Assembly: GCA_024137785.1 (NCBI GenBank)
Contig: JAHRHZ010000085.1
Coordinates: 2,463,456-2,524,487, forward strand
Reading direction: 5' to 3'
Origin: Ginglymostoma cirratum
Lineage: Eukaryota
Length of the DNA: 61,032 nucleotides
Under the pieces are notes generated by a model that was not told the DNA's origin, ran no database searches, and was given only the letters and a program-made list of their open reading frames with translations. Position 1 is the stretch's first letter, and each line of letters begins with the position of its first letter. Shown piece after piece: positions 662 to 51,478 of this stretch. The position numbers and the translations under genes are program-made.

Positions 662-705
662 GTTCAACAGAAAATGTAAGAAATCTCACTCAGCACAAAG
701 ATGAG
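662..705 (+). CDS. Gene A short cytoplasmic exon (xSTENVRNLTQHKDE); upstream V/C1/TM exons lie outside the window
   Basis: Acceptor caccag| at 661 (in-frame alternative aacag| at 670), donor gag|gtaagg at 706; phase 1 to 0 fits the next exon; homologous to 44906-44941 (ctcagcacaaagatgag|gtaagg vs ctcagcgtgaagatgag|gtgagg). Confidence 0.7.
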
Positions 706-818
706 GTAAGGCCTTTTGCCATCGACTTTGCTTTGAATTTCATCTGAATGATTCAGACATTGCAATCAAAATAATAAGCTTTTATCTGTGTGTATGAAGT
801 CAAAAATGTTCCTGTCTT

Positions 819-2870: not shown

Positions 2871-2979
2871 GTTTTCCTTGACAAAACTGCAACTTAGCCT
2901 TTAAGATAAAAAGAACAGAGAGAAAGAAATGATTAAATGTATTACAAATGCAACTCTGATACTTGTCATGAATAATTCC

Positions 2980-3580
2980 ATCATTGTACAGTCACCCACG
3001 TTTCAAGGCTCTCTTTCAACAACATTGTTAATTATCTATTTTTTGTGACATGTTACTAGATGGATACATTTCTCTAGTCTGTTCCTCAACATACTGCTCC
3101 AGAAGACTATCCCTAACACACTTTCAAACTCATCCTTCACAGCTTTAGTGCACATTAGTTTGTTGAGCCTTTGTCTTGATTGATTCCAGCCATGATTGTT
3201 GCAAAAACTATGCACCACACATCACAAATAGGTTTATTTATCTATGCCTCACATTACTAGTAGTGTTTGTGGTTTATAAGCAACGATCAATGTTTCCTGC
3301 TGCTTGCTGTTCCTTAGCTCCACCAGAAAAGATTGCTCATTTTGATATTCCAATCTGAGATCCTTATTCACTGATCCCACCCATTACTACGAGCAAAATA
3401 CTAACATATCTTCTCTTCCTCTGTCCATCCTAAATGACATTGAATATTATTGAAAAATCAGTTGTCCTGATTATCCTGCAGTGATGTGTTTGTCATGTCG
3501 ATTAAATCATAGCCATTCATCTCTATTTAATTGTTTTTAATTTTTTTTCTTGTTGCAAGTAATACATGCATTGAATGGAC
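2980..3580 (-). mobile_element. Very old CR1 ORF2 (endonuclease end) fragment
   Basis: Minus strand reads EMNGYDLIDMTNTSLQDNQD, resembling the CR1 APE start GYDxxAITETWLQ. Confidence 0.5.
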
Positions 3581-4374
3581 TGCCCTTGAATTTGTCATCG
3601 TCAACGTGATTCTAAGCTTTGCTAATGCTTACCTTCATTTCCCCTGGTCTTGCCAGGTTGTGAAATCCTGTGTTTCACTAACTTAGGCGCAGAGGTGCAG
3701 ATCAGAAGAGAACGAAAATTCCTAATAATAAAGCACATTGCACAAAATGTCTGAGAGCACATATGTAAATCAAAATTGATTTCTTGTATTTTGTTCTCTG
3801 AATGAAAGGAATACCATTGTTTATCCATTAAATTGTTTTATTGCTCTGTCTGACCACGTTCCCCATTAATCTGTTGCCCGATGTTTCTATCTTAACAAAA
3901 ATCTTCAGACCGAAATTAACAATTTGCTGGAAAATGTTGGTTCGCATCTTACGTACCTTAAAGATTCTGTGCAATTGAATTGCAAGTTCATCTTCACTAA
4001 AAAAAAACTTCACTGTCCCATTTGTCATTATTCAAATGGTGCTATTAAAATAACTATGGAGATCTAATTATTTTATCATTCTTCAACTCACCAATAAACG
4101 ATTGCTTTTATGAGTCTAATTAGCTCATTAATTTAAGCATTAAGCACAAAATATTAGGGAATGCCAGTTTTAAACTAATTAATGCACCAATCAAAAATCG
4201 CGTAGAAGTTTAGCTATTACACGCAGTTTGAATTTGTACTTTTACTTCCAAATGAGGAAACATGCATTTAATAAAATTTATTTATCTTTGTAAAGGAAAT
4301 TCAGGCCAATTCCGTTTAGAAAGTACAAAACACCTTCAACTTGTTATAGGATGTAATGTTGAATGATTTCCATA

Positions 4375-4722
4375 TGAATATGAATGTGGATAGCAAGAAG
4401 CTTTTTCCCAGATTGGGGGATTCAATTACTAGGGGTCACAATTTCAAGGTGAGAAGGAAAAGTTTTAGGGAGATATGCATGGAAAGTTCTTTACGCAGAA
4501 GGTGGTGGGTGCCTGGAACGCGTTGCCAGTGGAGGTGGTAGAGGTGGGCATGATTGCATCATTTAAGATGTAGCTAGACCGATACATGAATGGGCAGGGG
4601 GCAGAGGGACACAGATTCTTGGAAAATAGGTGACAGGTTTAGAAAGAGGATCTGGATCGGTGCAGGCTTGGAGGGCCGAAGGGCCTGTTCCTGTGCTGTA
4701 ATTTTTCTTTGTTCTTTGTTCT
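4375..4722 (+). mobile_element. CR1 LINE 3' fragment
   Basis: LFPRLGDSITRGHNFKVR...; 3' end gggccgaagggcctgttcctgtgctgta followed by a (ttctttg)n tail. Confidence 0.85.
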
Positions 4723-5049
4723 TTTGAATGTTGAAATTGATAATGTTGAATTAATGCAATCATTTTTTGCTCAGGAAACTGAATTTAGCAGGGTTCCTCT
4801 TCTAAGTTTTAACACACTCAAACATGAAGTTTCATAGTTTATGAGCAGGGTTGCATCAGCAACTGAGGAAGCTTTCATTTATGTCGAGTGGAGAGAAGGG
4901 GACTGGATGAAAAAGCTTTAAGCTATTAAGAATATAACAAAGAGGTAGCAGACTCATGGAGACAAAGTAATTACCATTGATTACTGTGGAAAACTGATTC
5001 CTGGCTCCAGAAAATAGAAATTAATGAATGTTAAACCTTAACTTTCCAG

Positions 5050-5160
5050 AGAAAACAAGAAACAGCTGAAGACAGATTAATTTATGCTCATCTTGAACTG
5101 GTCCATTCAAAGGATGCTAAAATTCCTCAGCCACAGGATGAAAAAACAGTGTATGCAGAG
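5050..5160 (+). CDS. Gene A cytoplasmic exon RKQETAEDRLIYAHLELVHSKDAKIPQPQDEKTVYAE (ITIM LIYAHL plus TVYAE)
   Basis: Acceptor tttccag|, donor gag|gtatct, phase 0-0, 111 nt, open frame; paralogous exon at 47399-47507. Confidence 0.85.
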
Positions 5161-5299
5161 GTATCTCTCTGTTCATATGTCTGAATAAAGTAACCATTTT
5201 CTTAATTACAATCATTTGGTTTTGAGATAACATTGAAGAATTCTAAACTTTTAGTGAAATTTGAAACAATAATGAATTACTTTCACTGTTGTTTTACAG

Positions 5300-5428
5300 A
5301 CCAAACATAGCACGAACAAATGCCAGCTGACTTACGCTGCTCTGAATTTGAATGGTCCCAGGTTAACAATGAAGCCAGAACACACAGCTGCAACTCCATT
5401 GTATGCCGCAGTGAAAGCCAGCAGCTAA
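5300..5428 (+). CDS. Gene A terminal coding exon TKHSTNKCQLTYAALNLNGPRLTMKPEHTAATPLYAAVKASS* (ITIM LTYAAL plus PLYAAV)
   Basis: Acceptor ttttacag|, 129 nt to TAA; same length and aligned motifs as 47650-47778. Confidence 0.85.
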   Translation, partial: TKHSTNKCQLTYAALNLNGPRLTMKPEHTAATPLYAAVKASS

Positions 5429-30981: not shown

Positions 30982-31069
30982 ATGTATGTTCTGCCAGATT
31001 TTCGTTGTCGCTATGTTTGTGAATGGATCACTGTGGAACTTATGTTTTTTTTGTGCATTTCGTATCCAG
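30982..31069 (+). CDS. Candidate leader exon of gene B (MYVLPDFRCRYVCEWITVELMFFLCISYP, or starting at ATG 31042)
   Basis: Open frame ending cca g|gtatat (phase 1) fits the V-exon acceptor ttaacag|tt at 31386. Alternative: in-exon ATG at 31353 (MLNHCTYLLLTVAVCTS). Confidence 0.35.
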
Positions 31070-31386: not shown

Positions 31387-31698
31387 TTGCTGTCTGCACT
31401 TCGGACAACGTTACTCCGGATATTAGGCAAATAAAGACCCTGATAAATACAACAGTCACCCTGCGATGCCCTTTCTCCTTCGAAGTCAACCATTCAAACA
31501 CAAATGTTTTCTGGTTCAGAGAAGGCAGTGAGACGCTTCTAAAGGAAGGCAGCAGAATACTCTTCAATGTAAAGAGAGGGGGAGCCTACCTTCATCTCTT
31601 TAATGTGACTGTTCTGGATGCTGGAACATATTACTGTATCGTCAAAAATCAGCATCAAACGGTCTCTGGGAAACAAGCAACGCAACTTGTTGTTTACG
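31387..31698 (+). CDS. Gene B V-set Ig exon with germline-joined J-like G strand
   Basis: VTLRC, VFWFR, AYLHL, DAGTYYC, SGKQATQLVVY; donor tac g|gttagt, phase 1; no stops. Confidence 0.93.
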
Positions 31699-32396: not shown

Positions 32397-32702
32397 CTTC
32401 ACCAGCTCCACTAAAAATTGTATTGATACGTTCCGAAGATCCTTCATCTGCTTCTTTCAAGCTGCAATGCAGGACATCTGGCTTTTCTCCGGAAGACTTT
32501 AACCTTACTTGGCGCAGAAACGGTACACAAATCTTCACTGGATTTAGAAATGTACACCAGGCAAAAGGCGAGGGACTTTATGAAGTGGTCAGCTCCTTGG
32601 ACGTGCCAAATATACCAGAAAGTGACACAGTCTACCTGTGTCAAGTATATCATGTTTCGAGCTCATTTCCAGTAAATGCCAGCTGCACTCTTACGAAAGA
32701 AG
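32397..32702 (+). CDS. Gene B C1-set Ig exon
   Basis: LQCRTSGFSPEDFNLTWRRNG...GLYEVVSSL...YLCQVYH (C1 signatures); acceptor aaagcag|, donor gaa g|gtaaga, phase 1-1. Confidence 0.93.
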
Positions 32703-33037
32703 GTAAGATTCTATGACACGTTGTACGTTAATCTTTCAGACACCGTTTGAAAAGATTCACGAAGTAGAAAGTGATTACTACAGTCAATTACCTATGATTA
32801 TGTCAATCCTACAATTTGACGCTGTTGTATGGTTAAAGATTTCCTTTCTTCAGCTTATTCTGAAGGTGTTTAGCATGTTGTCATGTGAGGTACTGCCAAA
32901 AGTGAATATTCGTCATTGAGAGGTCCCATAATTTTAATTAAATACACAATGTTACAATTGATTTCCGAACGTACATTCAATGTTAAATTCCATAACTGGA
33001 TCCGTTAAAGAGTGACAAAGAGATCGAGAGGAAAATA

Positions 33038-35772
33038 TGCGGATTGGCCATGCTAACATTGCCTGTAGTGTTCAGGGATGTGTAGATTAGATGGATTATG
33101 GGAGTTATGTACGGACCTCCTAACAGTGGTCAGGACCAGGGGTGCAAGATGCACCGGGAAATAGATAGGGCATGTCAGAAAGGCAAGGTCACGGTGATCA
33201 TGGGGGACTTCAATATGCAGGTGGACTGGGTGAATAATATTGCCGGTGGATCCAAAGAAAGGGAATTCATGGAATGCCTCCAGGATGGCTTTTTGGAACA
33301 GCTTGTGATGGAGCCCACAAGGGAGCAGGCTATTCTGGACTTAGTGCTATGTAATGAGCCAGACTTTATAAAAGATCTTAAAGTAAGGGAACACTTAGGA
33401 GGCAGCGATCATAATATGGTAGAGTTCAGTCTGTGGTTTGAAAGAGAGAAGACAAAATTGGATGTAATGGTGGTACAATTAAATAAAGGTAATTACAGGG
33501 GCATGAGAGAGGAACTGACGAAAATCGTCAGTTGGAAGCAGAGCCTAGCAGGGAAGACAGTAGAGCAACAATGGCAGGAGTTTCTGGGTGCAATTGAGGA
33601 CACAATACAGAGATTCATCCCAAAGAAAAGAAAGATTACCCGGGGGAGGATTAGACAGCCATGGCTGACAAAGGAAGTCAAGAAATGTATCAAAGAAAAA
33701 GAGACAGCCTAAATAGTGGCCAAGAGCACTGGAAAATCAGAAGATTGGGAAGGGTACAAGAACAAACAGAGGATAACAAAGAGAGAAATAAGGAAGGAGA
33801 GGACCGAATATGAAGGTAGGCTAGCCAGTAATATTAGAAATGATAGTAAAAGTTTCTTTCAATACATAAGAAACAAACGAGAGGCAAAAGTAAACACTGG
33901 CTGCTCCAAATTGATGCTGGAAAGCTAGTGATGGGAGATAAGGAAATAGCTGAAGACCTTAAGAAGTATTTTGCGTCAGTCTTCACAGTGGAAGACATGA
34001 GTAATATCCCAACAATTAAGGATAGTCAGGGGGCAGAGTTGAGTATGGTAGGCTTTACAAAAGAGAAGGTGCTAGAAAAGCTAAAAGGTCTAAAAATTGA
34101 TAAATCTCCTGGCCCCGATGGGCTACATCCTAGAGTTCTGAGGGAGGTGGCTGAGGAAATAACGGAGGCTATTGTGATCTTTCACAAGTCACTGGAGTCA
34201 GGGGAAGTCCCAGATGATTGGAAAATCGCTGTTGTAACCCTCTTGTTTAAGAAAGGATCAAGACAAAAAATGGAAAATTATAGGCCGATTCGCCTAACCT
34301 CGGTTGTTGGTAAAATTCTAGAATCTATCGTTAAGGATGAGATTTCTAAATTCTTGGAAGTGCAGGGTCAGATTAGAACAAGTCAGCATAGATTTAGTAA
34401 GGGGAAGCCGTGTCTGACAAACCTGTTAGAATTCTTTGAAGAGGTAACAAGTAGGTTAGACCAGGGGAACCCAGTAGATGTTATCTATCTAGACTTCCAA
34501 AAGGCCTTTGATCAGGTGCTTCACGGGAGGCTGCTGAGGAAGGTGAGGGCCCATGGTGTTTGAGGTGAGTTACTGGCATGGATCGAGGATTGGCTATCTG
34601 ACAGAAGGCAGAGAGTTGGGATAAAAGGCTCTTTTTCAGAATGGCAACTGGTGACAAGTGGTGTCCCGCAGGGTTCAGTGTTGGGGCTGCAGCTGTTCAC
34701 TTTATACATTAATGATCTGGATGAAGGGACTGGGGGCATTCTGGCAAAGTTTGCCGATGATACGAAGTTGGGTGGACAGGCAGGTAGTACGGAGGAGGTG
34801 GGGAGGCTGCAGAACGATTTAGACAGTTTAGGAGAGTGGTCCAGGAAATGGCTGATGAAATTCAAAGTGAGCAAATGTGAGGTCTTGCACTTTGGAAAAA
34901 AGAATACAGGAATGGGCTATTTTCTGAACGGTGAGAAAATTCATAAAGCCGAAGTACAAAGGGATCTGGGAGTGCTAGTACAGGATTCTCTAAAGGTTAA
35001 CTTGCAGGTTGAGTCCGTGATTAAGAAAGCAAATGGAATGTTGTCATTTATCTCAAGAGGGTTGGAATATAAAAGCAGCAATGTGCTTCTGAGACTTTAT
35101 AAAGCTCTCGTTAGGCCCCATTTAGAATACTGTGTCCAATTTTGGGGCCCACACCTTAGGAAGGACATACTGGCACTGGAGCATGTCCAGCGGAGATTCA
35201 CACGGATGATCCCTGGAATAGTAGGCCTAACATAGGATGAACGGCTGAGGATCCTGGGATTGTATTCATTCGAGTTTAGAAGGTTGAGGGGAGATCTAAT
35301 AGAAACTTACAAGATAATGCATGGCTTAGAAAGGGTGGACGCTGGGAAGTTGTTTCCGTTAGGTGGGGATACTGGGACCCGTGGGCACAGCCTTAGAATT
35401 CGAGGGGGTCAATTTAGAACGGAAATGAGGAGACATTTCTTCAGCCAGAGAGTGGTGGGCCTGTGGACTTCATTGCCACGGAGCGCAATGGAGGCCAGGA
35501 CGTTGAATGTCTTCAAGGCAGAGATTGATAAATTCTTGATCTCGCAAGGAATCAAGGGCTCCAGGGAGAGTGCAGGTAAGTGGAGTTGAAATGCCCATCA
35601 GCCATGATTAAATGGCGGAGTGGACTCGATGGGCCGAATGGTCTTACGTCCACTCCTATGTCTTATGGTCTTCTGGTCTTATTATAGGGGGATGGGTCTG
35701 GATGGGATGCTGTAAGGTTGGTGTGGACTTGTTGGGCCGAAGGGCCTGTTTCCACACTGTAGGGATTCTATG
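33038..35772 (+). mobile_element. HE1 SINE 3' part split by a CR1 insertion (33038-33097 and ~35681-35772)
   Basis: attggccatgctaacattgcc...gattagatggattat resumes as attataggggg...ccacactgtagggattcta after the LINE. Confidence 0.75.
33098..35680 (+). mobile_element. 5'-truncated CR1 LINE ORF2 (end of APE, full RT) with few disablements
   Basis: MGDFN, ILDLVL, SDHN (APE); YLDFQKAFD, GVPQGSVLG, KFADDTKL (RT); a few stops and frameshifts; (tcttatgg)n-like tail. Confidence 0.97.
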
Positions 35773-35999
35773 CTTCTAAAATCAGTTAATAAACGTGGAG
35801 CTGGAAAAACACAGCGGGTCAGAGAGCATCCGAGGAGCACGAAAGTCAATGTTTCAGGCCGAAATGTTGACTTTCCTGCTCCTGCAATGCTGTCGGACCT
35901 GCTGTGCTTTTCGACCTCCACACTTATTGATTCTAGCTTCCAGCCTCTGCCGTCCTTACCGTCAGCGAGCGGAATATCATCAGGTTATACAGCACAGAA

Positions 36000-36440
36000 A
36001 AAGCCCTTTGGTCCATTGGGTGCAGCACACCTATTTACACTAATCACACTTTCCAGCACTTCGCCCAAAGCCTTGAAAGTTATGACATTTTAATTGCTCG
36101 TCCACGTACATTTCTTAAAGCTTTCCCTCCTGCACTACCCTCCCAAGCAGTGCATTTTTGTTGCCCAATACACTCTCGGTGGAAAAATAAATTCTCCATG
36201 TTGCTCTAAACCTCTTGACTTTACCCCTACAAATTATGACTACACGTTACTTACCCTTCAATTAAAGGGAGCAGTTGCTTTACGTCCACCCTGTCCCTGC
36301 CTTCATAACCGTATACACCTCGATCAGGGCTCCCCTCAAACTTCTCTGCTCCAAACAAAACAGTGTGTCCTTCTCCAGAAACTTCACAGCTAAAATGTTC
36401 AAAACCAGGCAGCATCCTGGTGAATCTCCTTTACACCCTC
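36000..36440 (-). mobile_element. Old CR1 3' fragment
   Basis: Decayed reverse-strand CR1 3' end. Confidence 0.6.
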
Positions 36441-38770
36441 CCCAGTGCAATCAAATCTGGGAGGCCTAAAGTATCGAACAGATTATTTTAAGGTCTGATT
36501 GAAATGATTACAAGAAGACTAGTGAACTCATTATATAGCTCATTTATTCGGTTAATACTTCATACGTATATAAATTAAGGGTTGACATTTTACATTATGG
36601 ACAGATATTAAAATGAAATGGTTAATTTAAACTATTCAGATATATGTTTAAAAGCGATTCTCATACTGCCTTTCGGACTCGGCGGGGACTTTGGCGATGG
36701 CGGCACTTGGAGCTCTATCTCAGATTCCACGGCGTCCGTCTCACGAACTCCAGGCCAACGGGGAAAGTCTAATGACTGGGGCAAATTCCCCGATATTATT
36801 ACTGTTTTGAATCTACTGTTACATGCTACAGCACCATTTCATAGAACTTACAATATTTTTCCCGGTATAGCACTGTGCAGAAAAAAAACTGAAAAAATCT
36901 TCCGGATGGCTCCTTTTTAACCGCACGTTATTCTGTTTCCCACCCAGCCAAGGTCACACAGTTACCTCCCAGACAAAGAAGGCCGTTTTTACACTAAACA
37001 TGTCATTTTCCACTTGCCTTCAATTGCTGATTTCCATGTCCAAATACCCTTTCATGATTAACCCTGAATGGTATGGTTTGGAGATGTCTTTTTAAAGCCC
37101 ACACTACACACCTACAAAATAGATTATCAAAACCTTATGCAAGCACGTACATGCTGCTCAATAGCTGCAAGTTCTTTATACATGCGATATAGTTCACAGG
37201 CCATTACACGGTTATGTAAAAACGAGAAATAAACAATTAACAATAATATAAACAATAGGATACCATAACAGTGAGAGTACTGCTGAAGCGTTCGGTGACC
37301 ACCTGTTAAATATAACCCACTAATGATGCATAGTTAGGGCTCCGAAATTGCCTGCTTTGTGAATCAATTGATCGTGGCTGTAAGTCATGGCAATTTCTTG
37401 CTGTAAGAAGCATGGTGTACTGTTGCCAAATGAGAACTAATGTGCTGATGCTTGGCAAGGAAAGCCTGCAATTTCTTAAATATCACATGAAGAGGTGCTA
37501 TTAGCAAACTGCCAAACCTTGTCGCTCAAAAATCAATTTGCCAATTCTCAATGGGCTAATGGTTTGGCCCACACAGTAAGTAGTTTAATACCTTTCTTAT
37601 GTACTTGCCCAGCTTTATCAATTCTATTTTATTCAGTCTCAATACCCATGGAAGTTAATACACCTTTTCCCGCCTCTGATCAACCTAGAATAGTGACGAG
37701 TACGTTTCTCCTGCCTCTCCTCTGTAATGTTGACCGTGTGTACATCGAGCGGCAATGGGAAGATTATTTATTTCCATTAGTTATCTCCATTGTCCTCGTT
37801 AAAATGATATTCGGTTTGGGGCGCAGGTATCATACCAAAGCTGAAGATGGGGTGACTGTATGGCATTTAATGGGGCTGAATTCATAGCCCATCGTAATAA
37901 GCCACAAGATGGTTTACGCCCCATTATCTCTCTAGCTTTTTGACACAGCAGCGAATCACCCCGCATATGAGCCACTGCCAGGCAACATCTCCCTTTGGCG
38001 CTGTGTCCCAAACTCCCAGTAAGAAACCAGTTCAGTGGTGAGGTGTAATTATGTTAAGTGAGGGACATGCCTTCTTCAATAACCTAGCATCGCCACAAAG
38101 TTTGGGCCATTTCTTTAGCAGTGCCAGAGTGGGCCTGCACCTCACTCATTTTATTTCTCACATTGTTTGGAATCATACGCTCTGCCTAGCCCGTTGTATG
38201 CTCAGCAAAACAACACGCTGGCTTGGTCCCTGGATTTTCTGAGGATTAATTTCCCAGTATTTATTTCCGTAGGTGCTGAGTCAAAGTAGCCGTGTCCTCG
38301 GCTGTTGCTTCCTCTGAAGAGCCACGTAGCAATATATCATCAATATAAAGCGCTGTTATATCGCTGGAGAGAGGGAACATCTCCAGATCTTAGCTATTAA
38401 ACCGTGGCAGAGAGTTGGGTTGTGCATGTAGCCCCCGCAATTTACAAACTGAGAGTTCTCCGCCCTCCCGTGTGAAAGCAAATTCCTCATCAAGGAAATG
38501 AAAGTATTAGGTCGGTAGATTCCAGCAAACCATTCAACAGTTCCCAATGACAGTTGCTCCGGTAATGTTACAATGTCTGGGAGAGCCAATGCTAACGCTG
38601 GGGCGTGTTGGTTTAACCGTCAGCTATTGACAGTCATTCTCCAGTTACCACCTGGTTTCTGTATTGACCACACAAGGCGGTTATACAGGAAGACAGCAGG
38701 TCATAGAATCCTTCTTGTCACTGACCCTTCAGTAGTGTCTCTGATCTCCTTGTGCCCTCAATACTGCTTA

Positions 38771-39625
38771 CATAGAACATGAGAACATAAGACCTAGGAG
38801 CAGAAGTAGGCCATCTGGCCGCTCGAGCCTTCCCCGCCATTTAATAAGATCATGGTTGATCTTTTTGAGACTCAGCTCCACTTACCCGCCTACTCACCAT
38901 AACCTTTAATTCCTTTACTGTTCAAAAAATTTATCTAGCCTTGCCTTGAAAACATTCAGCGAAGTAGCTTCAACCACTTCACTGAGCAGGGAGTTCCACA
39001 GATTCACAACCTTTTGGGTGAAGAGGTTCCTCCTGACCTCAGTCCTACATCTGCTTCCCTTTATTTTGAGGCGATGCCCTCTAGTCCGAGCTTCACCTGT
39101 TAGTGGAAACAGCCTCCCTGCCCCCACCTTATCTATTCCCTTCATAATCTTATATGTTTCTTTAAAATCTCCCCTCATTCTTCTGAATTCCAGTGAGTAT
39201 AATCCTAACCCACTCAGTCTTTCCTCATAATCCAACCCTCTCAACTCTGGAATCGACCGAGTGAATCCCCTCTGCAACCCCTCCAGTGCTAGTATATCTC
39301 TTCTCAAGTAAGGAGACCAAAACTGCGCACAGTACTCCAGGTGTGGCCTCATCAGGACTCTATACAGCTGCAGCATAACCTCCCTATTTTTAAACTCCAT
39401 CCCTCTAGCAATGGCGGACAAAACTCCATTTGCCTTTTTAATGACCTGCTGCACCTGCAATCCTACTGTTAGCGATTCATGCACAAGGACACCGAAGTCC
39501 CTCTGCACAGCAGAGTGCTGCTATTTTTTATCATTTAAAACGTAGTCCATTTTCCTGTTATTCCTACCAAAATGGATGACCTCACACTTATCAACATTGT
39601 ATTCCATCTGCCAGACCTTTGCCCA
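38771..39625 (-). mobile_element. CR1 3' fragment inserted into the ERV pro-pol region
   Basis: 197 aa ORF with RPHLEYCAQFWSPYLRRDILALEG. Confidence 0.93.
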
Positions 39626-40318
39626 GTAACAATTGCCGTTAAAAATTCGTGAAGGAATGGCATGTATTGGGGTTCCCACTCAGCTTTCCCAACGACCATA
39701 TTCATACCTCATGCATCAAAAAAAGACTTTCCTACTGGGGTTCATATTTCCATCCCCCTCACAACATCCATCCCTAAAATATCTTCATTTATGCTGCATA
39801 TTAACACAGATACCATCCGCGGTGATCTATTCCCAAATGCCAACCGCACCAGTGCCGACAACCGCCGGTTTTTCCCGTCTCTTAAATCTATTGATAGTCA
39901 TTTTAGTTCCCACATGTCTGGGTCAAATCAAGCAAGACCACAATATGCTGTTTATCTCCATTTTTCCGATGAACTGTGTTATGGATGTATGGCCTCTGGA
40001 CGTCTGAGTTGACTCCCCTTTTAGTCACAGCTCAGTGTCCCTGCCACCTTCCCAGTCTAGGGGATTTTTCACGCTCCACATCTGCTCCAGTTCCTCCAAC
40101 GTGGGGTCCAGAAGGAAATCTGATTTTTTTTTGGGAAGGGCCATCTAAATCAGAATTGGTGTCTCACACCATGGGAGGGGTCGATTACCCGTTGGCCTCT
40201 TACCGGATTACAAATCTTCCAGAGGGAACATAGATCACTGGTGATGATACCATGCATTTTCAGTCTATATCAGACCTGTCTGTGCCTGTCTTCCATACAG
40301 CAGTAAACATCTCATTTT

Positions 40319-40490
40319 ATAGACAAAGGGAACTGCAGGTGCTGGAGAATCTGAGATAACAAGGTGCAGAGCTGGATGAATACAGCAGGCCATTTCTGAA
40401 GCATTTTCTGAAGGGTCGACTCCCGAAACGTCAGCTTTCCTGCGCCTCTGATGCTGCTTTGTTAATCCAGCACGACACCTTGGTATCGCA
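40319..40490. mobile_element. Penelope-derived fold-back repeat inside the ERV
   Basis: gggaactgcaggtgctggagaatc arm plus ctgaagggtcgactcccgaaacgtc arm. Confidence 0.7.
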
Positions 40491-40864
40491 GGAAGGCTGA
40501 CGGGTTATCCAAGCTCCCAGTGCCCTGCTTTCTGACCGAATATTTTTCCCAGATCCTGCAATTCTGTCAGTGGGTAATCCCGGACAACGCGAGCATGCTG
40601 TGGGGAGCCTGCTGGCCGTGGCCCTTAGATGTATTAGTTACTAACGGGCGCGCTAAGGGCCACATTATCACCATTAGAGAGTCCTTCCCCATCGGTCCCC
40701 TCGTACTTCAAATCGGACGAATATCACTCCCAGCGATAGGAGACCAGCTGAAGTTAATAAAAAGGGCACTTCAGCTGGATTCACTTTCCAGTTTGTTTTT
40801 TTTTCCGGCTCGCCCGCTTTTTGCGCTGCAATGTGGCCAATTTGCAGGTTATACAGTTTGACTG

Positions 40865-41140
40865 TCTGTTCTTACCAGTCCGGCAGTTAGACACACCATT
40901 GCCCTGCCCTTCTCACATTCCGATCACTTAATCTGCTCTGTCAACATCCTTTCTCCCTCAGCATTCCCACTCCCCAACCAACGTCCATTGTATAAATGGT
41001 GCCCCCTCCAGACTTCGCCAGCTCTGAGGAAGTGTCGTCTCGCCCCGAAACGTGAGCTTGCTCTCTCTCCATGGAAGCTGCCTGACCCTCTGTGATTCCC
41101 AGTACTTTTTGTTTTTGTTGCAGGCTGCGCTAGTCTGCTT
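40865..41140 (+). mobile_element. Penelope-derived repeat inside the ERV
   Basis: ctctgaggaagtgtcgtctcgccccgaaacgtgagcttgctctctctccatgg; related to the outer element at 46572-47310. Confidence 0.6.
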
Positions 41141-42664
41141 CTACTCGGCTTTATCTGCTCTTTCCTGAGTGGTCCAAGCCGCCCTCGCCAGCGCAGCGGT
41201 CAACGTCCCATTCGCCTACTTTAAATCTCGCACTTCCCGGGGCAGTATACGGGAGTCCGCTCAGCAGGATCCACCCATGTGGGTGACGCCGTTGGTTTGC
41301 TTTGGGAAACCTACTTCCCGCAGACAGCCTTTCATGGCGCCAAGTAATCCCTTGGGATTCTGCTCCTAATCCCTTTCCCAAAACTAAGTGGTCCTGCCAC
41401 AGACAACCGGTCACTAACACACGGAACCAATTATTCCAGGACCATGCCGGGACACAGAATGCTTCCACAGCCAAAGTAGCCTTCATTTTCGTCAACGTTT
41501 TGCTCAGACCCTGCACGTAGCACCAAATGGTTCGGCTGAAAGTACCCAACTGGCTCTTTAAATTCTGGTCACAATGATTACTAGTGTACTTCAGTATGTA
41601 TAACTTTTTGGGTTAAAACGCTTTACATATCTGAATTACAAGTCTGAGTTTACACTACACAGATATATTGAAGCTAACCGGTGACGTTAACTAACTGAGA
41701 TATGTATTAAACATGTAAGTTTCACACCACCTTTCCGCTCCCCGGGGACTTTGGCGATGGCGGGACTTGGAGCTGTATCTCCAATTCCACGGCACCCGTC
41801 TCACGCCCAATAGTGAAAGTAGAAATGAGTGGGGCACAGTCCCAGATATTAAAACTGCTCTGAATAAAATGTTACACGCTGTTTCACGATTCGCTCGTAT
41901 TTTCAGTGCTTTCCCACGAATTCCACTGTGTAAAAACAGGTTAAAAACACTTTCAAATTCGTTCCTTTTTAACTGCATAATATTGTGTTTCCGTCCAAGC
42001 CAAGAGACGCTGTTTTGCAGTAACTTTGTCATTTTCCACTTGTCTTCACTTGCACATTGTCATGTCCAACTACCCAGAACGAATCACTCGAATGTTCTGT
42101 TTTGGAGACATCTTTAACCCCAACACTACACCTGAATGTCGCGCCGCAACCAGAACTACACACAGTACTCCCCTGTGAGCAAACTAAAGGCCCATTGTAA
42201 AACTCCAGTGTAATCTCTCTCCTTTTATAATCTACCCCACTCCAGATGAAAGCATATGCCCTGCATGTTTCTTAACCATCCTATTAACTTGCCCTGCCAC
42301 CTTCAGTGATCTGTAAACAAGAAGTCCAAGATCTGCCTGCTCCTCTGAAATTCCTGGTGTCTTGCCGTTCATTGGGCAGTCCCTTGTGTTGTTATTTCTT
42401 CTAAAGTTCATTGATTATCTTCTAATACATTCAGAAACCAACATAGCCCAAGGTGAATGTCCCCATTAATCATAATAGAAACACAGTTTGGTCGATTTTT
42501 TTTGTATTCATTGAATGTGGTATTTTCTGAGAGGACACTTATTGTCTGTACCTCATTGCCAAGAGAGCAGTTAACAACGATCCAATTTGCAGTTAGTCGC
42601 ATGCAGGACAGTTAACAATGGTAGAATAACTTCCAAAAGGACATTAAGTTAACTACGTGGTGTT

Positions 42665-43805
42665 AGAGTCATAGAGATGAACAGCATGGAAACAGACCTT
42701 CATTCCACCTTATCCATGCCTACCAGATATCCTCAATTAAGCTATTCCATTTACCAACATTTGGTCCATATCCCTCCAAACCCCTTCCGATTCATACATC
42801 CATTCAGATGCCTTTTAAATGTTGTAATCGTACCAGCCTCTACCATTTCCTCTGGAAGTTCATTCCAGACACAGAACACCCCGTAGATCACTTTTAAATT
42901 GTATGCCTGTCACCTTACACCTATGCCCTCTAGTTTTGGAATCCCCTACCCAGGGGAAAAAATTGATTATTCACCCTATCCATGGCCTATGATTTTATAA
43001 ACCTGCATATTTTATAAACCTATATAAAGTCACCTCTCAGCCTCTGACACTCCAGAGAAAATAAGTCTAGACTATTCAGTGTCGCCCAATTGCTCAAACT
43101 CTCCAACTACAGCAACATCCTTGTAAATCTTTTCTGAACCCTTTCAAGTTTAACAACATCTTTCCTACAGTAAGGAGATCAGTGTTTTTAAGACAAACAC
43201 TGTTACAGGTTTTTGTTGAATTCAAATTTCACCATCTAGTTCTAGTTGCTCGACTATAGAAAGGATATTATTAAACGAAATGGAGTGCAGACAAGATTTC
43301 CTAGGATATTATCTGGACTTGAAAATTAAGGAGAAGCTGGATCGGATGGGACTTTTTTTCTCTGGACCGTAGAGACTGAAGGGTGACCTTATAAAGGTCT
43401 GTAAAATCATGAGAGGCAGATTTGAGCAGATAGCCAACAGCTTTTCCCCATGGTAGGGGAGTCTAAGACTAGAGGGAACAGGATTAAAGTAAGACGACAG
43501 AGATACAAAAGAGTCCAGAGGAGCAATTTTTCACAAAGAGGGTGGTGAGTGTCTGGAACAGTCTGCCAGAGATGATGGTGGGGGCGAGTACAATTTTGTC
43601 ATTTAAGAAACATTTGCCCAGGTGCATGGATAGGTTGGGTCGAACATTGAACATAGAAAATTACAACGCAGTACAGCCCCTTCGGGGGTTTGGAGGGATA
43701 TGGACCAAATGTAGGCAAATGGGACAAGAGTAATTGTGAAAACTGGGCGGCATGGACAAGAACGGCGAAGGGCGTGTTTCCGTGCTGTCAACCTCTATAA
43801 CTCTA
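42665..43805. mobile_element. Two CR1 3' fragments (minus 42665-43180, plus 43245-43805)
   Basis: CR1 3' UTR and ORF2-end motifs on both strands (RVVSVWNSLPEM). Confidence 0.75.
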
Positions 43806-44364
43806 TGATATAGATCCACACATACAGTAGCTCCCGTTTATTTCCCCAATTCGTCAGAATGCCACATACTTGATTCAATATGAAACACAGAGTCAGAGCT
43901 GATTGGGTTGTAGCTGCAGAGAGATTCAAATTATTTCAACTGAAGTTTGCCTCCACAGAAAACTCAAGCAAATCTGACGGCAGGTTCCATTATATACTTT
44001 TTCAGACAACAATCTGTCTGCAATTCAATTAAATTCCCAACAAACAATTTAGTATTTTGCCACATAGCTGAGAGAACTGAATGCTTCGTGCAATTAGCAC
44101 TATTTCCGCATTAATTTTAAATGTGCTATTAGTTGAGGTACTTTTGTCATTTACCCATTTCTCTAAGTTCCAGACATTTTGCTTCTGGCTGCAAACGGAT
44201 CAGTTGAACAATGAGACAAGAGAATTGAAATGCTGTGACTTTATGGACTATATTTATCACATGTGTAAGGCAGTACAATTGAAAATGACAGACGTGACAT
44301 TTAAACCTGTGCATTTTCAGTTTCTGTTGCAATTCCTAATTTTGAATTTATATTAACATTACAG

Positions 44365-44478
44365 ATTTTGCCTTTGAAATCAGTGTTCCTATGGCTGCCG
44401 GTTGCGCGGCTCGTGCACTTGCAATTCTGATATTGACCTTGATGATTGCCAAGGGTTTTCTGTTCTTTATCTCCAAAG
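44365..44478 (+). CDS. Gene B transmembrane exon DFAFEISVPMAAGCAARALAILILTLMIAKGFLFFISK
   Basis: Acceptor attacag|, donor aaa g|gtatga, 114 nt, phase 1-1, compatible with the C1 exon; hydrophobic stretch containing Arg and Lys. Confidence 0.82.
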
Positions 44479-44905
44479 GTATGAACAGGATAGAAATGTC
44501 TATCTGAAATTAACTTAATTGCGAGCTGAATTTCTGAACTGGACAATTTAAATAAATATTTTATGTGAAACCTCTTTCAAATCTTGACATTGCTTCTCAT
44601 CAAATATAAAACAAAAAGATTTGAAGTTTCGCTTTGTGAACTATATCAGTGTAGGTCAAAATTGTATTGCTGAAATTCATTGGTGTCAGAAGTTTCTGTA
44701 GCTTCAATCATGAAAACATAAATTCAAAGCATCTGCGTGTAACATGTAGAGCTGTATTGCAAAACTGTGTTTCCTATTGTACCCTGTTTACAAATATTGA
44801 ATAGCAGTCAAATTGCTTTTGGTTTCTTTGGTTTGCCGATGAGTGCAAATATCAGCCTTTTTTGTTGCTGACTAATAACATTTTTATTTCTCTAATGGGG
44901 GAAAG

Positions 44906-44941
44906 AAAACATCAATAAATTGAACTCAGCGTGAAGATGAG
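44906..44941 (+). pseudogene. Gene B short cytoplasmic exon, damaged (+1 nt, weak acceptor); reads ENINKLNSA*
   Basis: Homologous to 671-705 but 36 vs 35 nt; stops in all three frames; donor gag|gtgagg retained. Confidence 0.7.
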
Positions 44942-46571
44942 GTGAGGCAAATTTCCTTCATTCTATTTATTTTAATTTTCAAGGCTAATTGAACAATTTA
45001 AGCTGGGAACACAAATATATATTTCTAACATGTCAAGGTGAGTCTTGAACATTTCATCAGCTCTCAAAAACACAACATCAGCTGAATGAAAACACAATAA
45101 AGAAAATCGAAAGTGGTAGGAAGTTTCATGAACTGTTCCAACTGTTTAAATCATCAAACATAGTTGTGAAATAGCTTTGATTTTTGTTTTCATTCGCATT
45201 TACCAAGTGACAGTGCGCTGAATAATTTTGCCATGTTGATTACAGACATGAAAATCAAAGTTGATTCCATTAGGCTGATGACTGTTTTGAATGGTAGGTT
45301 TCCAGGTGCAAATAGAGATGATTATTCCCTCCTTCTTTTCTGCACTGTTTAAATTCACTCAGCATTAGTCTGAGTTCAGTGATTATGTCTGACTTCTACT
45401 GAGGAACAGTTTGCACAAGTTGGCTTCCTGAGAAAGCTTTTACTGTTGGCTGTCTCTCTGCTAGTGCAGCGTGCTGCAGCACCATGCAATCTTGGAAAAC
45501 AAACAGACGAGCTGTTGTGCTGCAAACTTCTCTGATTTTTAATTTTCGACATGTAGATATCAGTGATATATGAGAGGCACATCCCTATCTGTGGCACCTG
45601 AAAAGGAGCGGGTGGCGCTTATCCAGGAATAACTGATAATAGTTTGGAAAAACTTGAAGTCTTTAGTTGGCTACTACAGAGGGCACAATGCTATTACACA
45701 TATTTTATGCTTGACTACAGTTGAATACAGCGCAGGCCAGCAGTTTTGATCTGTTTAAATGCGTTTTAAAGCAGTTGAAGCCTTTCTATCAATTGAACTG
45801 CTTTATTATCTCAGTTTCAGTCTTGGACCTGAATTTGATCTTTTTTTTAAAAAAATCATTCTCCTTCCTTGAGTATAATACAACAAAAAGTACCCTCATC
45901 TTTCATTGCATCCGGTGCCTGCAACTCCCTCCCTGACAACAATGTTGGAGTGCAGTCAGTCAAGAAAGCTGGTGTGTTGCTGGACTCTAAATAGTAAATG
46001 ATTATTGGCATCAAATACTGGTCTTGCCACTGAGGCTCACATACTATTAAAAATAGTACTTCGGGCAGAATAGACCCACTCACTGCAGGCGCAGCAAAAA
46101 TTAAATTCCTTTCCTGGGGGTCTTCAGAAAATTACTTCAAACTCTTTACTCCATCACTGCACGTCTTTCTGTGAAATGTTGCAGCTGATACTGTTGTAGG
46201 TCACAGAATAAAGTTCTCTGATGGCCAGGTGCGATGCTTTGCCTGTGTTTTAATGTTTTATGAGCAATGGATCAGATGGAAAGATGGAACAAAATTATCT
46301 ATGATTGAGAAATGCTTCACAGAAGACCAAAGAGTCCATTTCAGAACACTGAAATATTGTGGCTTGCGTTTTCGACCAAAGTCACATTTTTACATTGTCA
46401 CTCACCAGACCATATTCCTCCCCAAATAGTTGACATATTTTCTGACTTAAAACATCAATAATTTACTTTAAACATCCTGTCTGGCATCACCCATACCTTG
46501 CAACTCCTTTGACAGTGTGCTGTACCTTTGTCTTCACTTCACACTTTAACACCTTTATTTATTACTGTTTT

Positions 46572-47310
46572 GATGCTGGAATCTGTGCTGAAACAACAAA
46601 TGCTGGAGATCACAGGGGGTCAGACTGCATCCATGGAGAGAGAGCAAGCTAGCAGAGCTGTGATGAAGAGTCATCTAGTCTGGAAACATTGTATCGGAGA
46701 TAAAAGGTACTGCAGATGCTGGAGAATCCGAGATAACAAGCATGGGGGCTGGATGAACACAGCAGGTCAAGCAGCATCATAGGAGCAGGAAAACTTGACG
46801 TTTCGGGCCTAAACCCTTCATCAGAAATGGGGGAGGGGAAGAGTGTTCTGAAATAAATAGGGAGAGAGGGGGAGGTGGATAGAGGATGGATAGAGGAGAG
46901 GATAGGTGGAGAGGAGGCAGCCTATCGACTAACATCATCCCGCCCCCTTGACCTGTCCGTCCTCCCTAGACTGACCTATCTCCTCCCTACCCCCCTACCT
47001 ACACTCACCTTTAATGGCTCCATCCCCGCCTCTTCGACTTGTCTGCCTCCTCTCCACCTATCCTCTCCTCTATCCATCCTCTATCCGCCTCCCCCTCTCT
47101 CCCTATTTATTTCAGAACCCTCTTCCCCTCCCCCATTTCTGATGAAGGGTTTAGGCCCGAAACATCAAGTTTTCCTGCTCCTATGATGCTGCTTGACCTG
47201 CTGTGTTCATCCAGCCCCATGCTTGTTGTCTGGAAACATTACCTTGCTCTCTGTCTCCATGGGAGTTGTGTGACCCGCTTTCATCTCCAGCATTTGTTGT
47301 TTTCAGTACA
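46572..47310. mobile_element. Older Penelope-derived fold-back repeat with a younger one nested at 46691-47227 (13 bp TSD)
   Basis: gtctggaaacatt at 46678-46690 and 47228-47240; hammerhead cores at 46797-46824 (-) and 47139-47166 (+). Confidence 0.88.
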
Positions 47311-47398
47311 ACAAATAATTGTTCATGTTAAGAACATACACTTGTCTCTTTACTCCAAAAACAAAATAACCAAATGATATTAAATCTTGGCTTTCGAG

Positions 47399-47507
47399 AG
47401 AAAAGGTCAGTTGCCTGACGATAAGCTGCAATATGCTGCTCTTGATCAAGTTGGTTCTGAGCCTGGCATAATGTCAAAACAACAGAAAGAAATCACAATC
47501 TATAGAG
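47399..47507 (+). pseudogene. Gene B ITIM exon, damaged: RKGQLPDDKLQYAALDQVGSEPGIMSKQQKEITIY then frameshift
   Basis: Aligns to 5050-5160; acceptor tttcgag instead of tttccag; 109 vs 111 nt (tat-a-gag vs tat-gca-gag). Confidence 0.8.
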
Positions 47508-47649
47508 GTATATTTAAGGTCATATAAGTATATAATAAGTTCATTCATTATAATCAGTTGATCTTGAGATGGCATTTAACCATCTTTGTGTAATTTTCAT
47601 CGAGAATGATTTAAATGAATGGTAATTCAGTGTCAATGTTGTTTTTCAG

Positions 47650-47778
47650 ACAAAAAACTGCATGACAGACACCAGGCCGACTTCCCTTGCTCTGAAATTC
47701 AATGATTCTAGGACATCATCAAAACCCAAATGCCAAGAAAATAGTCCAGTTTATGCAGCGGTAAAAAGCAGCCACTGA
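47650..47778 (+). pseudogene. Gene B terminal exon TKNCMTDTRPTSLALKFNDSRTSSKPKCQENSPVYAAVKSSH* (ITIM Tyr lost; now out of frame)
   Basis: Acceptor ttttcag|; same length as 5300-5428; LTYAAL corresponds to PTSLAL, PLYAAV to PVYAAV. Confidence 0.8.
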
Positions 47779-51081: not shown

Positions 51082-51478
51082 CTTCTTTCGCAATAGTGTA
51101 ACTGACATTTGCTGGAAATGAGCTTGAAATGTGATGCACTAGACAAGTGTAAACTGTGTCACATTCGACTGCCTCTGACACCTCTAAGGTGCTGACAACC
51201 TCGAAGTCTGTTGGTGTTTCCTTGTTTTTCATTTCTAACTGCAGTCAAGACTTTTCTGAAGAAAGGTCTCGGCCCAAAACATCAGCTTTCCTGCTCCTCT
51301 GATGCTGCTTGGCCTGCTGTGTTCATCCAGCTCCACACCTTGTTATCCAAGGATTTTGTATTCTTTTTGTGTGAAGTAAAATAAATGTCTTTTGGGTAAA
51401 ATGCAGAAGTCCTGCGCTGCAGAATGAAAGAAATGTCTTCTCAATGTACTGGCACAATTTTCAGGGCAGTTGGTGAAT
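51082..51478 (-). pseudogene. Locus C C1 exon (paralog of 32397-32702), disrupted
   Basis: DSPTALKIVPVH*EDISFILQRRTSAFYPKDIYFT...[insert]...FEVVSTLEVSEAVECDTVYTCLVHHISSSFPANVSYTIAKE; stop, first Cys to Arg, frameshift, repeat insertion. Confidence 0.9.
51251..51347 (+). mobile_element. Penelope-derived short repeat inserted in the locus C C1 exon
   Basis: ctgaagaaaggtctcggcccaaaacatcagctttcctgctcc...; flanked by caaga / caagga. Confidence 0.85.

What the first reader, a model, noticed from the sequence alone, without database searches (positions are those of the whole stretch)
44365..47778. Apparent inhibitory-to-activating (or decoy) conversion of gene B
Seen: V, C1 and TM exons are intact, but every cytoplasmic exon is damaged - +1 nt and weak acceptor (44906-44941); CAG-to-GAG acceptor and 2 nt deletion (47399-47507, ITIM LQYAAL still legible); ITIM Tyr to Ser (47650-47778). 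The splice routes examined give short Tyr-free tails (ENINKLNSA*, DKKLHDRHQADFPCSEIQ* or GMNRIEMSI*). The TM has Arg (AAGCAARALAIL) and Lys. Known: activating paired receptors (NKp30, NKp46, LILRA, SIRP-beta1) combine a charged TM residue with a short tail and use FcR-gamma, CD3-zeta or DAP12. Inference: an activating receptor derived from an inhibitory one with the fossil tail still in place. Early pseudogenisation is the alternative.
Basis: partly seen in the sequence, partly recalled or inferred. Interest (0 to 1): 0.85.

Follow-up and report, generated by a model that had tools for sequence, protein, structure and literature searches.

The report
Shark SIRP-like receptor, Arg-type, tail lost
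Gene B is a recombinant copy of a shark immune-receptor family in which an old "activating-type" membrane-and-tail cassette (arginine in the membrane span, shortened tail) sits behind the outer domains of an inhibitory relative; this copy has lost its last inhibitory motif, but we cannot tell whether it still works.

Summary
The sequence observation holds. V (31387-31698), C1 (32397-32702) and TM (44365-44478, Arg codon 44412-14) are open with canonical splice sites. The three tail exons cannot give an ITIM tail by any route examined.

Comparison with annotated sharks shows that most of the "damage" is the normal, old state of a receptor lineage:
- Zebra shark XP_048402851 ("SIRP beta-1-like") has Arg in the same TM column, the same 2-nt loss at the end of cyt2, and the same shifted C-terminus.
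- An epaulette shark model has the same Arg.
- ITIM-tailed relatives have Gly at that column.

Gene B is also a mosaic. Its V and C1 are sister to an inhibitory zebra shark gene, while its TM and tail belong to the Arg lineage.

This follows the two-step route known from KIR and Ly49. No RNA evidence or ortholog DNA could be obtained, so working gene (about 0.4) and recently dead gene (about 0.45) stay open. The scan's first readers noted similar V-C1 paired clusters elsewhere in this genome.

The parts
31013..31069 (+). Leader exon of gene B. The homologous start codon is at 31013 and the T8 run at 31045-31052. The frame slips between the N-terminal half (frame of 31013) and the last codons (frame compatible with the V exon).
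   Evidence: The first 11-16 residues from 31013 match family leaders (MF.xxSLW...). The last residues (..ISYP|V) match family leaders only in the other frame. 57 nt to the donor gives phase 0, but the V exon needs phase 1. The only in-phase ATGs are at 30982 and 31042.
31387..31698 (+). V (VJ-like) exon, intact, phase 1 at both ends
   Evidence: open frame, acceptor ...aacag, donor gttagt. (Pfam V-set/ig). (sister to zebra shark P0153, support 99/99, 72% identity).
32397..32702 (+). C1-set exon, intact, phase 1 at both ends
   Evidence: (PF07654 C1-set, E 7e-10). (sister to P0153, support 100/100, 86% identity).
32703..44364 (+). C1-TM intron of 11.6 kb, inflated by retroelement insertions. 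It holds no other family exon.
   Evidence: reverse-transcriptase-like ORFs at 33098-35589 on the + strand and 38915-39508 on the - strand. (no family hit between 32707 and 44319). Scan note s1-879135 (ERV-like element at 36505-42130, not checked here).
44365..44478 (+). TM exon. Arg codon CGT at 44412-44414. The Lys is family-wide. Ends in phase 1.
   Evidence: It is 78% identical to the TM exon products of P0156, P0154 and P0161, and the Arg sits in the same column as in P0156 and P0154; run X2 covers most of the exon without differences.
44551..44556 (+). AATAAA 73 nt after the TM exon donor: a possible poly(A) signal for an unspliced read-through transcript (tail GMNRIEMSI*)
   Evidence: Its use is inferred, not shown.
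44897..44941 (+). cyt1 relic. The homologous acceptor is lost (AAT), there is a +1 nt insertion, and every frame has a stop. A cryptic AG lies before 44906.
   Evidence: The frame that leaves the exon in phase 0 is homologous to P0156's cyt1 but holds a TGA (for the P0156 sequence).
47399..47507 (+). cyt2. Open in frame 0, with LQYAAL and ..TIYR legible. The 2-nt loss at the 3' end is shared with zebra shark P0156. The acceptor has G at -3.
   Evidence: 64% identical to P0156 and 71% to P0152; both B and P0156 end ...TIYR and then continue in the shifted frame.
47650..47778 (+). cyt3. In the lineage's shifted frame it gives an 18-residue C-terminus with stop TGA at 47703-05. In the abandoned frame 0 it shows Ser (47683-85) for the ITIM Tyr and a kept PVYAAV.
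   Evidence: The shifted peptide matches the C-terminus of P0156 at 13 of 18 residues and stops at the same place. Frame 0 is 72% identical to P0152.
662..5428 (+). Gene A tail exons (662-705, 5050-5160, 5300-5428), used as the intact inhibitory comparator. This four-Tyr tail is orthologous in type to zebra shark P0153, not to gene B's tail.
   Evidence: A cyt2 is 73% and cyt3 67% identical to P0153. (similarity to a rodent SIRP-alpha tail, E 5e-5). (58-67% DNA identity to the B tail exons).

Best explanation
Gene B belongs to an elasmobranch family of SIRP-like V-C1-TM receptors that come in inhibitory and activating-type forms.

**The signalling half.** The TM and tail of gene B carry the family's old 'Arg-type' cassette. 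This cassette came from an inhibitory four-Tyr tail by two changes:
- A Gly-to-Arg change in the TM.
- A 2-nt loss at the end of cyt2, which shifts cyt3 into a short Tyr-free ending.

Both changes predate the split from the zebra shark lineage, where the cassette is annotated as a gene and still keeps one ITIM.

**The outer half.** V and C1 come from a different, inhibitory lineage of P0153 type. Gene B is therefore a recombinant, most simply formed by unequal crossing-over in the C1-TM intron.

**What is private to this genome.** cyt1 has died, which puts the remaining ITIM out of reach. Every transcript route therefore gives a tail of 18 residues or fewer without Tyr.

**Most plausible productive route (inferred).** Direct TM-to-cyt3 splicing:
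- It keeps the phase.
- It recreates the lineage's conserved C-terminus.
- It puts the stop in the last exon.
- The lost cyt1 acceptor and the weak cyt2 acceptor favour it.

If the protein is made, it would signal through the Arg by pairing with an ITAM adaptor of the FcR-gamma, CD3-zeta or DAP12 kind. That step is inferred from known receptors.

**Odds.** The confidence given is for the identity and history of the cassette. I put the odds that this copy is still a working gene at about 0.4, because the leader has a frame slip.
For: **Shown.**
- Arg stands in the same TM column in gene B, zebra shark P0156 (XP_048402851.2, named SIRP beta-1-like) and epaulette shark P0154. Gly stands there in ITIM-tailed P0152, P0153, P0029 and P0151.
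- P0156 ends cyt2 with ...TIYR and continues in the same shifted cyt3 frame to the same stop as gene B, with 13 of 18 residues identical.
- Within zebra shark, P0156 and ITIM-tailed P0152 are 79% identical overall and have identical V domains, which is a classical receptor pair.
- Horn shark has a second pair, 87% identical: P0028 (Arg one column earlier, short tail) and P0029 (Gly, ITIM tail). Its Arg is in a different column and so looks independent.
- Gene B's V and C1 group with P0153 (support 99/99 and 100/100), while its TM and tail are closest to P0156 and P0152.
- V, C1 and TM (732 nt) carry no stop or frameshift, and their splice sites are canonical.
- Relative-rate counts show no speed-up in gene B against its annotated orthologues: V 7:9, C1 4:6, TM 3:4.
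- A dead family member on the other strand (52455-51083) shows what long decay looks like: several frames and stops within V and C1.
- dN/dS against gene A is 0.37 for cyt2 and 1.0 for cyt3 in frame 0. This fits cyt3 frame 0 having been abandoned early (small numbers).

**From the literature.** The same two-step path is described for KIR and Ly49 (PMC2213150): a charged TM residue first, then ITIM loss; spread of the signalling domain by recombination; dual-motif intermediates.
Against: - **Leader:** the canonical start codon is out of frame with the V exon. The in-phase ATG at 30982 has a weak context and gives an atypical leader with acidic residues before the hydrophobic core.
- **Expression:** no RNA evidence. 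The only possible RNA run (X1) has nothing on the unique parts of 44200-48200. That run is contigs only and it is not certain to be RNA.
- **Poly(A):** there is no AATAAA or ATTAAA within 820 nt after the cyt3 stop.
- **Weak rate test:** cyt2, which cannot be translated in gene B, also shows no speed-up (5:4). The cyt1 death may therefore be recent, and the whole gene could have died with it.
- **Arg position:** hydropathy windows are ambiguous. The best 19-mer starts right after the Arg and holds the family-wide Lys.
- **Conflicting relative:** whale shark P0161 has a short cyt1-frame tail but Gly, so the lineage is not uniform. That model is also incomplete.
- **Gene conversion:** conversion from a working neighbour could keep V and C1 intact in a dead gene.
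Confidence: 0.6

Rival explanations
1. Gene B is a pseudogene: a recently disabled copy in a birth-and-death cluster. The leader frame slip blocks the normal start. cyt1 decayed after or with it. V, C1 and TM are still open only because little time has passed, shark DNA changes slowly, or gene conversion refreshed them.
For: - There is a leader frame slip in the T8 run.
- cyt1, a 45-nt exon, carries three separate lesions.
- The untranslatable cyt2 shows no rate excess, so intact-looking sequence is no proof of use.
- A pseudogene lies next door.
- No RNA was seen.
- There is no poly(A) signal after cyt3.
Against: - All lesions lie in parts that an activating-type receptor can spare or bypass. 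There are none in the 732 nt of V, C1 and TM.
- An in-phase upstream ATG exists at 30982.
- The phases allow a clean TM-to-cyt3 product.
- The T8 length could be an assembly slip. No reads were laid on it.
Confidence: 0.3
2. The V-C1 exons and the TM-tail exons are not one transcription unit. They are leftovers of two neighbouring genes, brought within 11.6 kb of each other by a deletion and retroelement insertions, and are never spliced together.
For: - The two halves belong to different family lineages.
- The intron is long and full of retroelements.
- There is no RNA evidence for the junction.
Against: - Both halves lie on the same strand in the right order, with matching phase 1 on both sides and good splice sites.
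- No other family exon lies between them, and no spare TM exon or V exon lies nearby on the + strand.
- Such recombinants are the usual way activating signalling domains spread (PMC2213150).
Confidence: 0.06
3. The private lesions (cyt1, the leader T8 run) are assembly errors. Gene B really encodes a P0156-like dual receptor with an Arg and one ITIM.
For: - The homopolymer length at 31045-52 is the kind of place where assemblies slip.
- The lesions in cyt1, cyt2 and cyt3 were not covered by the window's own reads in the one DNA run laid.
Against: - cyt1 differs by substitutions as well as an indel: the acceptor CAG has become AAT, and a TGA sits in the homologous frame. Assembly errors rarely look like this.
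- The unique stretches that X2 does cover agree with the window at every base (records 9-13).
Confidence: 0.04

Closest known systems
Short-tailed activating KIR and activating Ly49 derived from inhibitory homologues (Abi-Rached and Parham 2005, PMC2213150)
   Same: - The same route: a basic residue gained in the TM, then ITIMs removed by changes in tail length and frame, leaving relic ITIM-coding sequence.
- Dual-motif intermediates exist.
- The activating signalling domain is moved onto other ectodomains by recombination.
- Members are often lost to frameshifts.
   Different: - A different Ig architecture (V-C1 here, against D0-D2 C2-type domains or lectin domains).
- A different vertebrate class.
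- The Arg cassette here looks much older, being shared by at least three carpet-shark-type species, than the 13-18 My hominoid short-tailed KIR.
- The adaptor and the ligand are unknown.
SIRP-alpha / SIRP-beta1 paired receptors of mammals
   Same: - An N-terminal V domain followed by a C1-set domain.
- Inhibitory members have a four-Tyr tail with the same motif pattern. Gene A's cyt2 aligns to a rodent SIRP-alpha tail at E 5e-5.
- There is an activating-type partner with a basic TM residue and a short tail.
- NCBI's automatic names for the shark relatives are PTPNS1-like and SIRP beta-1-like.
   Different: - One C1 domain, not two.
- Arg rather than SIRP-beta1's Lys.
- By sequence the ectodomain is no closer to SIRP-alpha than to B7-H3 or Ig light chains.
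- Orthology, CD47 binding and DAP12 use are untested.
KIR2DL4-type dual receptors (TM Arg plus one ITIM)
   Same: The zebra shark orthologue of gene B's cassette (P0156) combines the TM Arg with one LTYAAL ITIM in a shortened tail.
   Different: Gene B itself cannot reach that ITIM. The resemblance is in design only and no homology is implied.
NKp30 (NCR3) and other non-rearranging VJ receptors of sharks (UrIg, UrIg2; PMC12227049, PMC10751288)
   Same: - A germline-joined V exon.
- A C1 domain, as in UrIg.
- A TM Arg and a short tail, as in NKp30.
   Different: - NKp30 has no C1 domain and no ITIM-tailed partner.
- UrIg and UrIg2 have other domain layouts.
- The papers read do not mention ITIM or SIRP in this context.
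- Gene B's V lacks the GxG bulge motif, as does P0153.

Membership tests
Activating member of a paired inhibitory/activating IgSF receptor family | Ectodomain closely related to that of an ITIM-bearing counterpart | tested here: met
   Gene B's V and C1 are sister to ITIM-tailed zebra shark P0153 (72% and 86% identity; support 99/99 and 100/100). The partner in this genome (gene A's ectodomain) lies outside the window and was not seen.
Activating member of a paired inhibitory/activating IgSF receptor family | Basic residue in the TM that inhibitory members lack | tested here: met
   Arg (CGT, 44412-14) is present, and Gly stands in that column in P0152, P0153, P0029 and P0151. Caveats: hydropathy does not fix whether the Arg is inside or at the outer edge of the span, and the Lys is family-wide and not diagnostic.
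Activating member of a paired inhibitory/activating IgSF receptor family | Short cytoplasmic tail without ITIM | tested here: met
   Every route (cyt1 inclusion, TM to cyt2, TM to cyt3, read-through) ends after 6 to 18 residues beyond the TM exon without a Tyr (for three routes; the TM-to-cyt2 route, EKRSVA then stop, read by hand).
Activating member of a paired inhibitory/activating IgSF receptor family | Association with an ITAM adaptor through the basic residue | not testable with these tools
   No shark adaptor sequence was at hand for complex prediction. This needs co-expression with an Arg mutant.
Activating member of a paired inhibitory/activating IgSF receptor family | Expressed as a spliced mRNA with a usable start and signal peptide | tested here: inconclusive
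   No RNA run holds the stretch. The canonical ATG is out of phase, and only ATGs 30982 and 31042 are in phase.
SIRP family (SIRP-alpha/beta) | V-C1-C1 ectodomain | tested here: not met
   Only one C1 exon lies between the V and TM exons, and there is no further family exon in the intron. The shark relatives are also V-C1.
SIRP family (SIRP-alpha/beta) | Four-Tyr ITIM tail in inhibitory members | tested here: met
   The tails of gene A, P0152 and P0153 carry four Tyr; two of gene A's sit in canonical ITIMs. Gene A's cyt2 aligns to a rodent SIRP-alpha tail at E 5e-5.
SIRP family (SIRP-alpha/beta) | Orthology (synteny) and CD47 binding | not tested
Pseudogene | Disabling lesion in an indispensable part | tested here: inconclusive
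   The leader frame slip could disable the gene, but an in-phase upstream ATG exists and the run length is unverified. V, C1 and TM have no lesion.
Pseudogene | Neutral evolution of the coding exons | tested here: inconclusive
   There is no rate excess at protein level against orthologues, but the test also fails to flag the untranslatable cyt2.

The most novel reading that the evidence does not exclude
Sharks have a SIRP-like V-C1 paired-receptor system in which a single Arg-bearing signalling cassette is shared across carpet-shark-type lineages. That cassette is shuffled onto different inhibitory ectodomains: P0152-type in zebra shark and P0153-type here. All stages of the inhibitory-to-activating path still exist side by side: a full ITIM tail, Arg plus one ITIM, and Arg with no tail. 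Horn shark made the same switch independently, one residue away. This would be the deepest-branching and longest-lived example of the two-step switch known from KIR and Ly49. Gene B would be its working end state, made by skipping the two dead exons.
Probability: 0.35. Interest if true: 0.65.

Novelty: new member of a known kind. Interest (0 to 1): 0.45.

Why it matters
Paired inhibitory and activating receptors are thought to arise again and again under pathogen pressure. The step-by-step record comes almost entirely from mammals (KIR, Ly49, LILR, SIRP).

Here the same path can be read in cartilaginous fish:
- A charged TM residue comes first, then the tail is lost.
- The signalling domain is spread by recombination.
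- Living intermediates exist in related species.

That points to a general rule of receptor evolution since early jawed vertebrates. It also gives a concrete set of shark genes for testing which adaptors (FcR-gamma, CD3-zeta, DAP12) were already used that way.

No paper found in these searches describes this shark family, which so far carries only automatic names. For gene B alone the value is smaller. It is one copy of uncertain status, and the striking 'damage' is mostly inherited design.

Tried and rejected
**Reads and expression**
- The look-up of sequencing runs on the V-C1 stretch gave no run on record as RNA.
- Read laying on 44200-48200 showed only repeat cover for X1. For X2 it showed thin cover that misses cyt2 and the window's own cyt3.
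- Expression and most lesions therefore could not be checked.

**Ortholog DNA**
No ortholog DNA could be fetched and no codon-level dN/dS on V, C1 or TM was possible. Protein-level relative-rate counts were used instead and have little power.

**Protein searches**
- The V-exon search against all representatives is swamped by giant multi-Ig proteins. Only four family representatives appear.
- A third homologue search with P0153 added nothing and found no protein from the window's own species.
- Searches of solved structures place the ectodomain only generically among V-C1 proteins.

Exons were searched separately by reference.
It was redone from the session's files.

**Ideas considered and dropped**
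- Gene A as the direct parent of gene B's tail: rejected, since they are only 58-67% identical in DNA.
- The TM Lys as a sign of activation: rejected, since all members have it.
- The whale shark model's short tail as proof of a shared cyt1 frameshift: not usable. Any shift at the exon start gives the same stop, and that model is incomplete.

**Literature**
- Searches for a description of this shark family found none.
Full report
**What is in the window.**
- The + strand holds the tail of an upstream gene A: cyt exons at 662-705, 5050-5160 and 5300-5428.
- It also holds one further gene, B:
  - leader near 31013-31069;
  - V at 31387-31698;
  - C1 at 32397-32702;
  - TM at 44365-44478;
  - three tail exons at 44906-44941, 47399-47507 and 47650-47778.
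- A third family member lies on the minus strand (V about 52455-52133, C1 about 51476-51083). It is broken by stops and frame changes.
- No other family exon lies between gene B's C1 and TM. The 11.6-kb intron is filled with retroelement ORFs.
- The window has no N.

**Check of the observation.**
- V, C1 and TM are open in the phase-1 frame, with AG and GT sites.
- Pfam calls V-set/ig for the V exon and C1-set for the C1 exon.
- The TM has Arg (CGT, 44412-14) and a Lys.
- cyt1 is closed in all frames. It has a 1-nt insertion, and AAT stands where gene A has its CAG acceptor.
- cyt2 is open in frame 0 with LQYAAL, but lacks 2 nt at its 3' end and has G at -3 of the acceptor.
- cyt3 is open in frame 0, with Ser where the ITIM Tyr should be.
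A fourth route, TM to cyt2, gives EKRSVA then stop (read by hand; not run as a translation).

**What the family is.**
- A search with the V exon and follow-up searches recover a family found only in sharks and rays. NCBI names its members automatically as PTPNS1-like (that is, SIRP-alpha-like), SIRP beta-1-like, or uncharacterized.
- Inhibitory members (zebra shark P0152 and P0153; horn shark P0029 and P0151) have V-C1-TM and a tail with several tyrosines, ITIMs among them (four Tyr in P0152 and P0153). Gene A's cyt2 aligns to a rodent SIRP-alpha tail.
- By sequence the ectodomain is a generic V-C1. It matches B7-H3, light chains and SIRP-alpha about equally.
- I found no paper describing the family. 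The shark VJ-C1 papers I read deal with UrIg and NKp30.

**The key comparison.** Aligning the TM and tails shows:
- **Zebra shark P0156** (XP_048402851.2) has Arg in the same column as gene B. Its cyt2 ends ...TIYR. It then continues in the same shifted cyt3 frame to the same stop, with 13 of 18 residues identical to gene B's shifted reading.
- **Epaulette shark P0154** has the same Arg. Its model then runs on into the next gene.
- **ITIM-tailed members** have Gly in that column.
- **The Lys** is present in all members.

So the Arg and the 2-nt truncation are old, shared features of an 'Arg-type' signalling cassette. Within that cassette, the cyt3 frame-0 Tyr-to-Ser change is decay in an abandoned frame.

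In zebra shark the cassette still has cyt1 and one ITIM (LTYAAL). That makes it a dual-motif receptor. It pairs with P0152, whose V domain is identical.

Horn shark has its own pair, 87% identical: P0028 (Arg one column earlier, short tail) and P0029. The different column points to an independent switch.

**Mosaic structure.**
- Trees of V and of C1 put gene B with zebra shark P0153, an ITIM-tailed gene (support 99/99 and 100/100; 72% and 86% identity).
- The TM, cyt2 and cyt3 of gene B are closest to P0156 and P0152.
- Gene A's tail is of P0153 type and only 58-67% identical in DNA to gene B's tail.
- Gene B is therefore a recombinant: an inhibitory-lineage ectodomain joined to the Arg cassette. 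This is inferred from the trees. The breakpoint must lie in the C1-TM intron.

**What is private to this genome.**
- *cyt1.* Three lesions kill it: the lost acceptor, the +1 insertion, and a TGA in the frame homologous to P0156's cyt1. This puts the remaining ITIM out of reach.
  - The first 11-16 residues from ATG 31013 match family leaders.
  - The last residues match only in the other frame.
  - The switch lies in a T8 run (31045-52).
  - The canonical ATG reaches the donor in phase 0, while the V exon needs phase 1.
  - Only the ATGs at 30982 and 31042 are in phase.
- The T8 run could be a real +2 insertion or a homopolymer slip in the assembly.

**Is the copy in use?**

Evidence for:
- There is no lesion in the 732 nt of V, C1 and TM.
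- There is no rate excess against annotated orthologues (V 7:9, C1 4:6, TM 3:4).
- The lesions sit where an activating-type receptor can spare them.
- TM-to-cyt3 splicing keeps the phase, recreates the lineage's C-terminus and puts the stop in the last exon. Routes through cyt1 or cyt2 would leave a stop more than 55 nt before the last junction, so nonsense-mediated decay should remove them (inference).

Evidence against:
- The leader has a frame slip.
- There is no RNA evidence.
- There is no poly(A) signal within 820 nt after cyt3, though one lies at 44551 after the TM exon.
- The untranslatable cyt2 shows no rate excess either (5:4), so the rate test has little power.
- Hydropathy does not fix whether the Arg lies inside the span.

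I put a working gene at about 0.4, a recently dead gene at about 0.45, and other readings at about 0.15.

**Read evidence.**
- Run X2 (DNA, about 5x, contigs) agrees with the window on the unique stretches it covers, apparently including the Arg codon.
- X2 does not cover cyt2. It covers cyt3 only with deeper paralogue contigs, which read TAC (Tyr) at 47684 together with other differences.
- Those contigs come from other family members with an intact ITIM. They are not evidence against the window's Ser.

**Comparison with what is known.**
- The pattern matches the model worked out for KIR and Ly49: a charged TM residue first, then ITIM loss; spread of the activating signalling domain by recombination; dual-motif intermediates; frequent loss of activating members (PMC2213150).
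- It works like SIRP-beta1 or a short-tailed KIR.
- It is not a SIRP by the domain test, having one C1 instead of two. Orthology was not tested.

**Limits.**
Exons were handled separately by reference.

**Verdict.**
The inhibitory-to-activating-type conversion is real, but it is old and lineage-wide. Gene B is a recombinant carrier of it that has gone one step further.
- Whether gene B is still a working gene is open.
- It is a new member of a known kind, of moderate interest.

Noticed in passing
window 31013-31069 (T8 run at 31045-31052): Gene B's leader exon changes reading frame inside a run of eight T. The canonical start codon is out of phase with the V exon, and only the ATGs at 30982 and 31042 are in phase. 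This could be a real +2 insertion or a homopolymer slip in the assembly.
   Followed up: partly
window 51083-52455, minus strand: A third family member (V and C1 only) lies here, broken by several frame changes and a stop. Its V is closest to the P0152/P0156/P0154 type. No TM or tail exon was found for it. It serves as an in-window picture of a long-dead copy.
   Followed up: partly
window 47632-47720 (run X2 contigs): Two deeper contigs (depths about 20 and 27, against about 5 for single-copy DNA) differ from the window at 7 or more places and read TAC (Tyr) at 47684. This shows several paralogues with an intact LTYLAL ITIM elsewhere in the genome.
   Followed up: no
window 46745-46920 and 47043-47218: A near-perfect inverted repeat lies in the cyt1-cyt2 intron: 176 nt arms, 98% complementary, 122 nt apart. 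It is built from a very abundant short repeat that is also present at 1-240 and about 7690-8090. It could form a long hairpin in the pre-mRNA.
   Followed up: partly
window 33098-35589 (+), 38915-39508 (-): Reverse-transcriptase-like ORFs of retroelements lie inside gene B's C1-TM intron. A scan note calls 36505-42130 an ERV-L-like provirus.
   Followed up: no
P0153 (zebra shark XP_048402855.2), residues 1-42: The annotated orthologue of gene B's ectodomain also lacks the family's usual MF..SLW leader and starts with an unrelated 42-residue N-terminus. The leader problem might therefore be shared by this ectodomain lineage. This could not be checked without DNA.
   Followed up: no
P0070, P0155, P0157, P0166 (sharks); P0158-P0160 (rays): Other family members use quite different TM exons that also carry Arg (and Asp, His or Asn) and have short tails. 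So the family has further activating-type forms besides the Arg cassette studied here.
   Followed up: no
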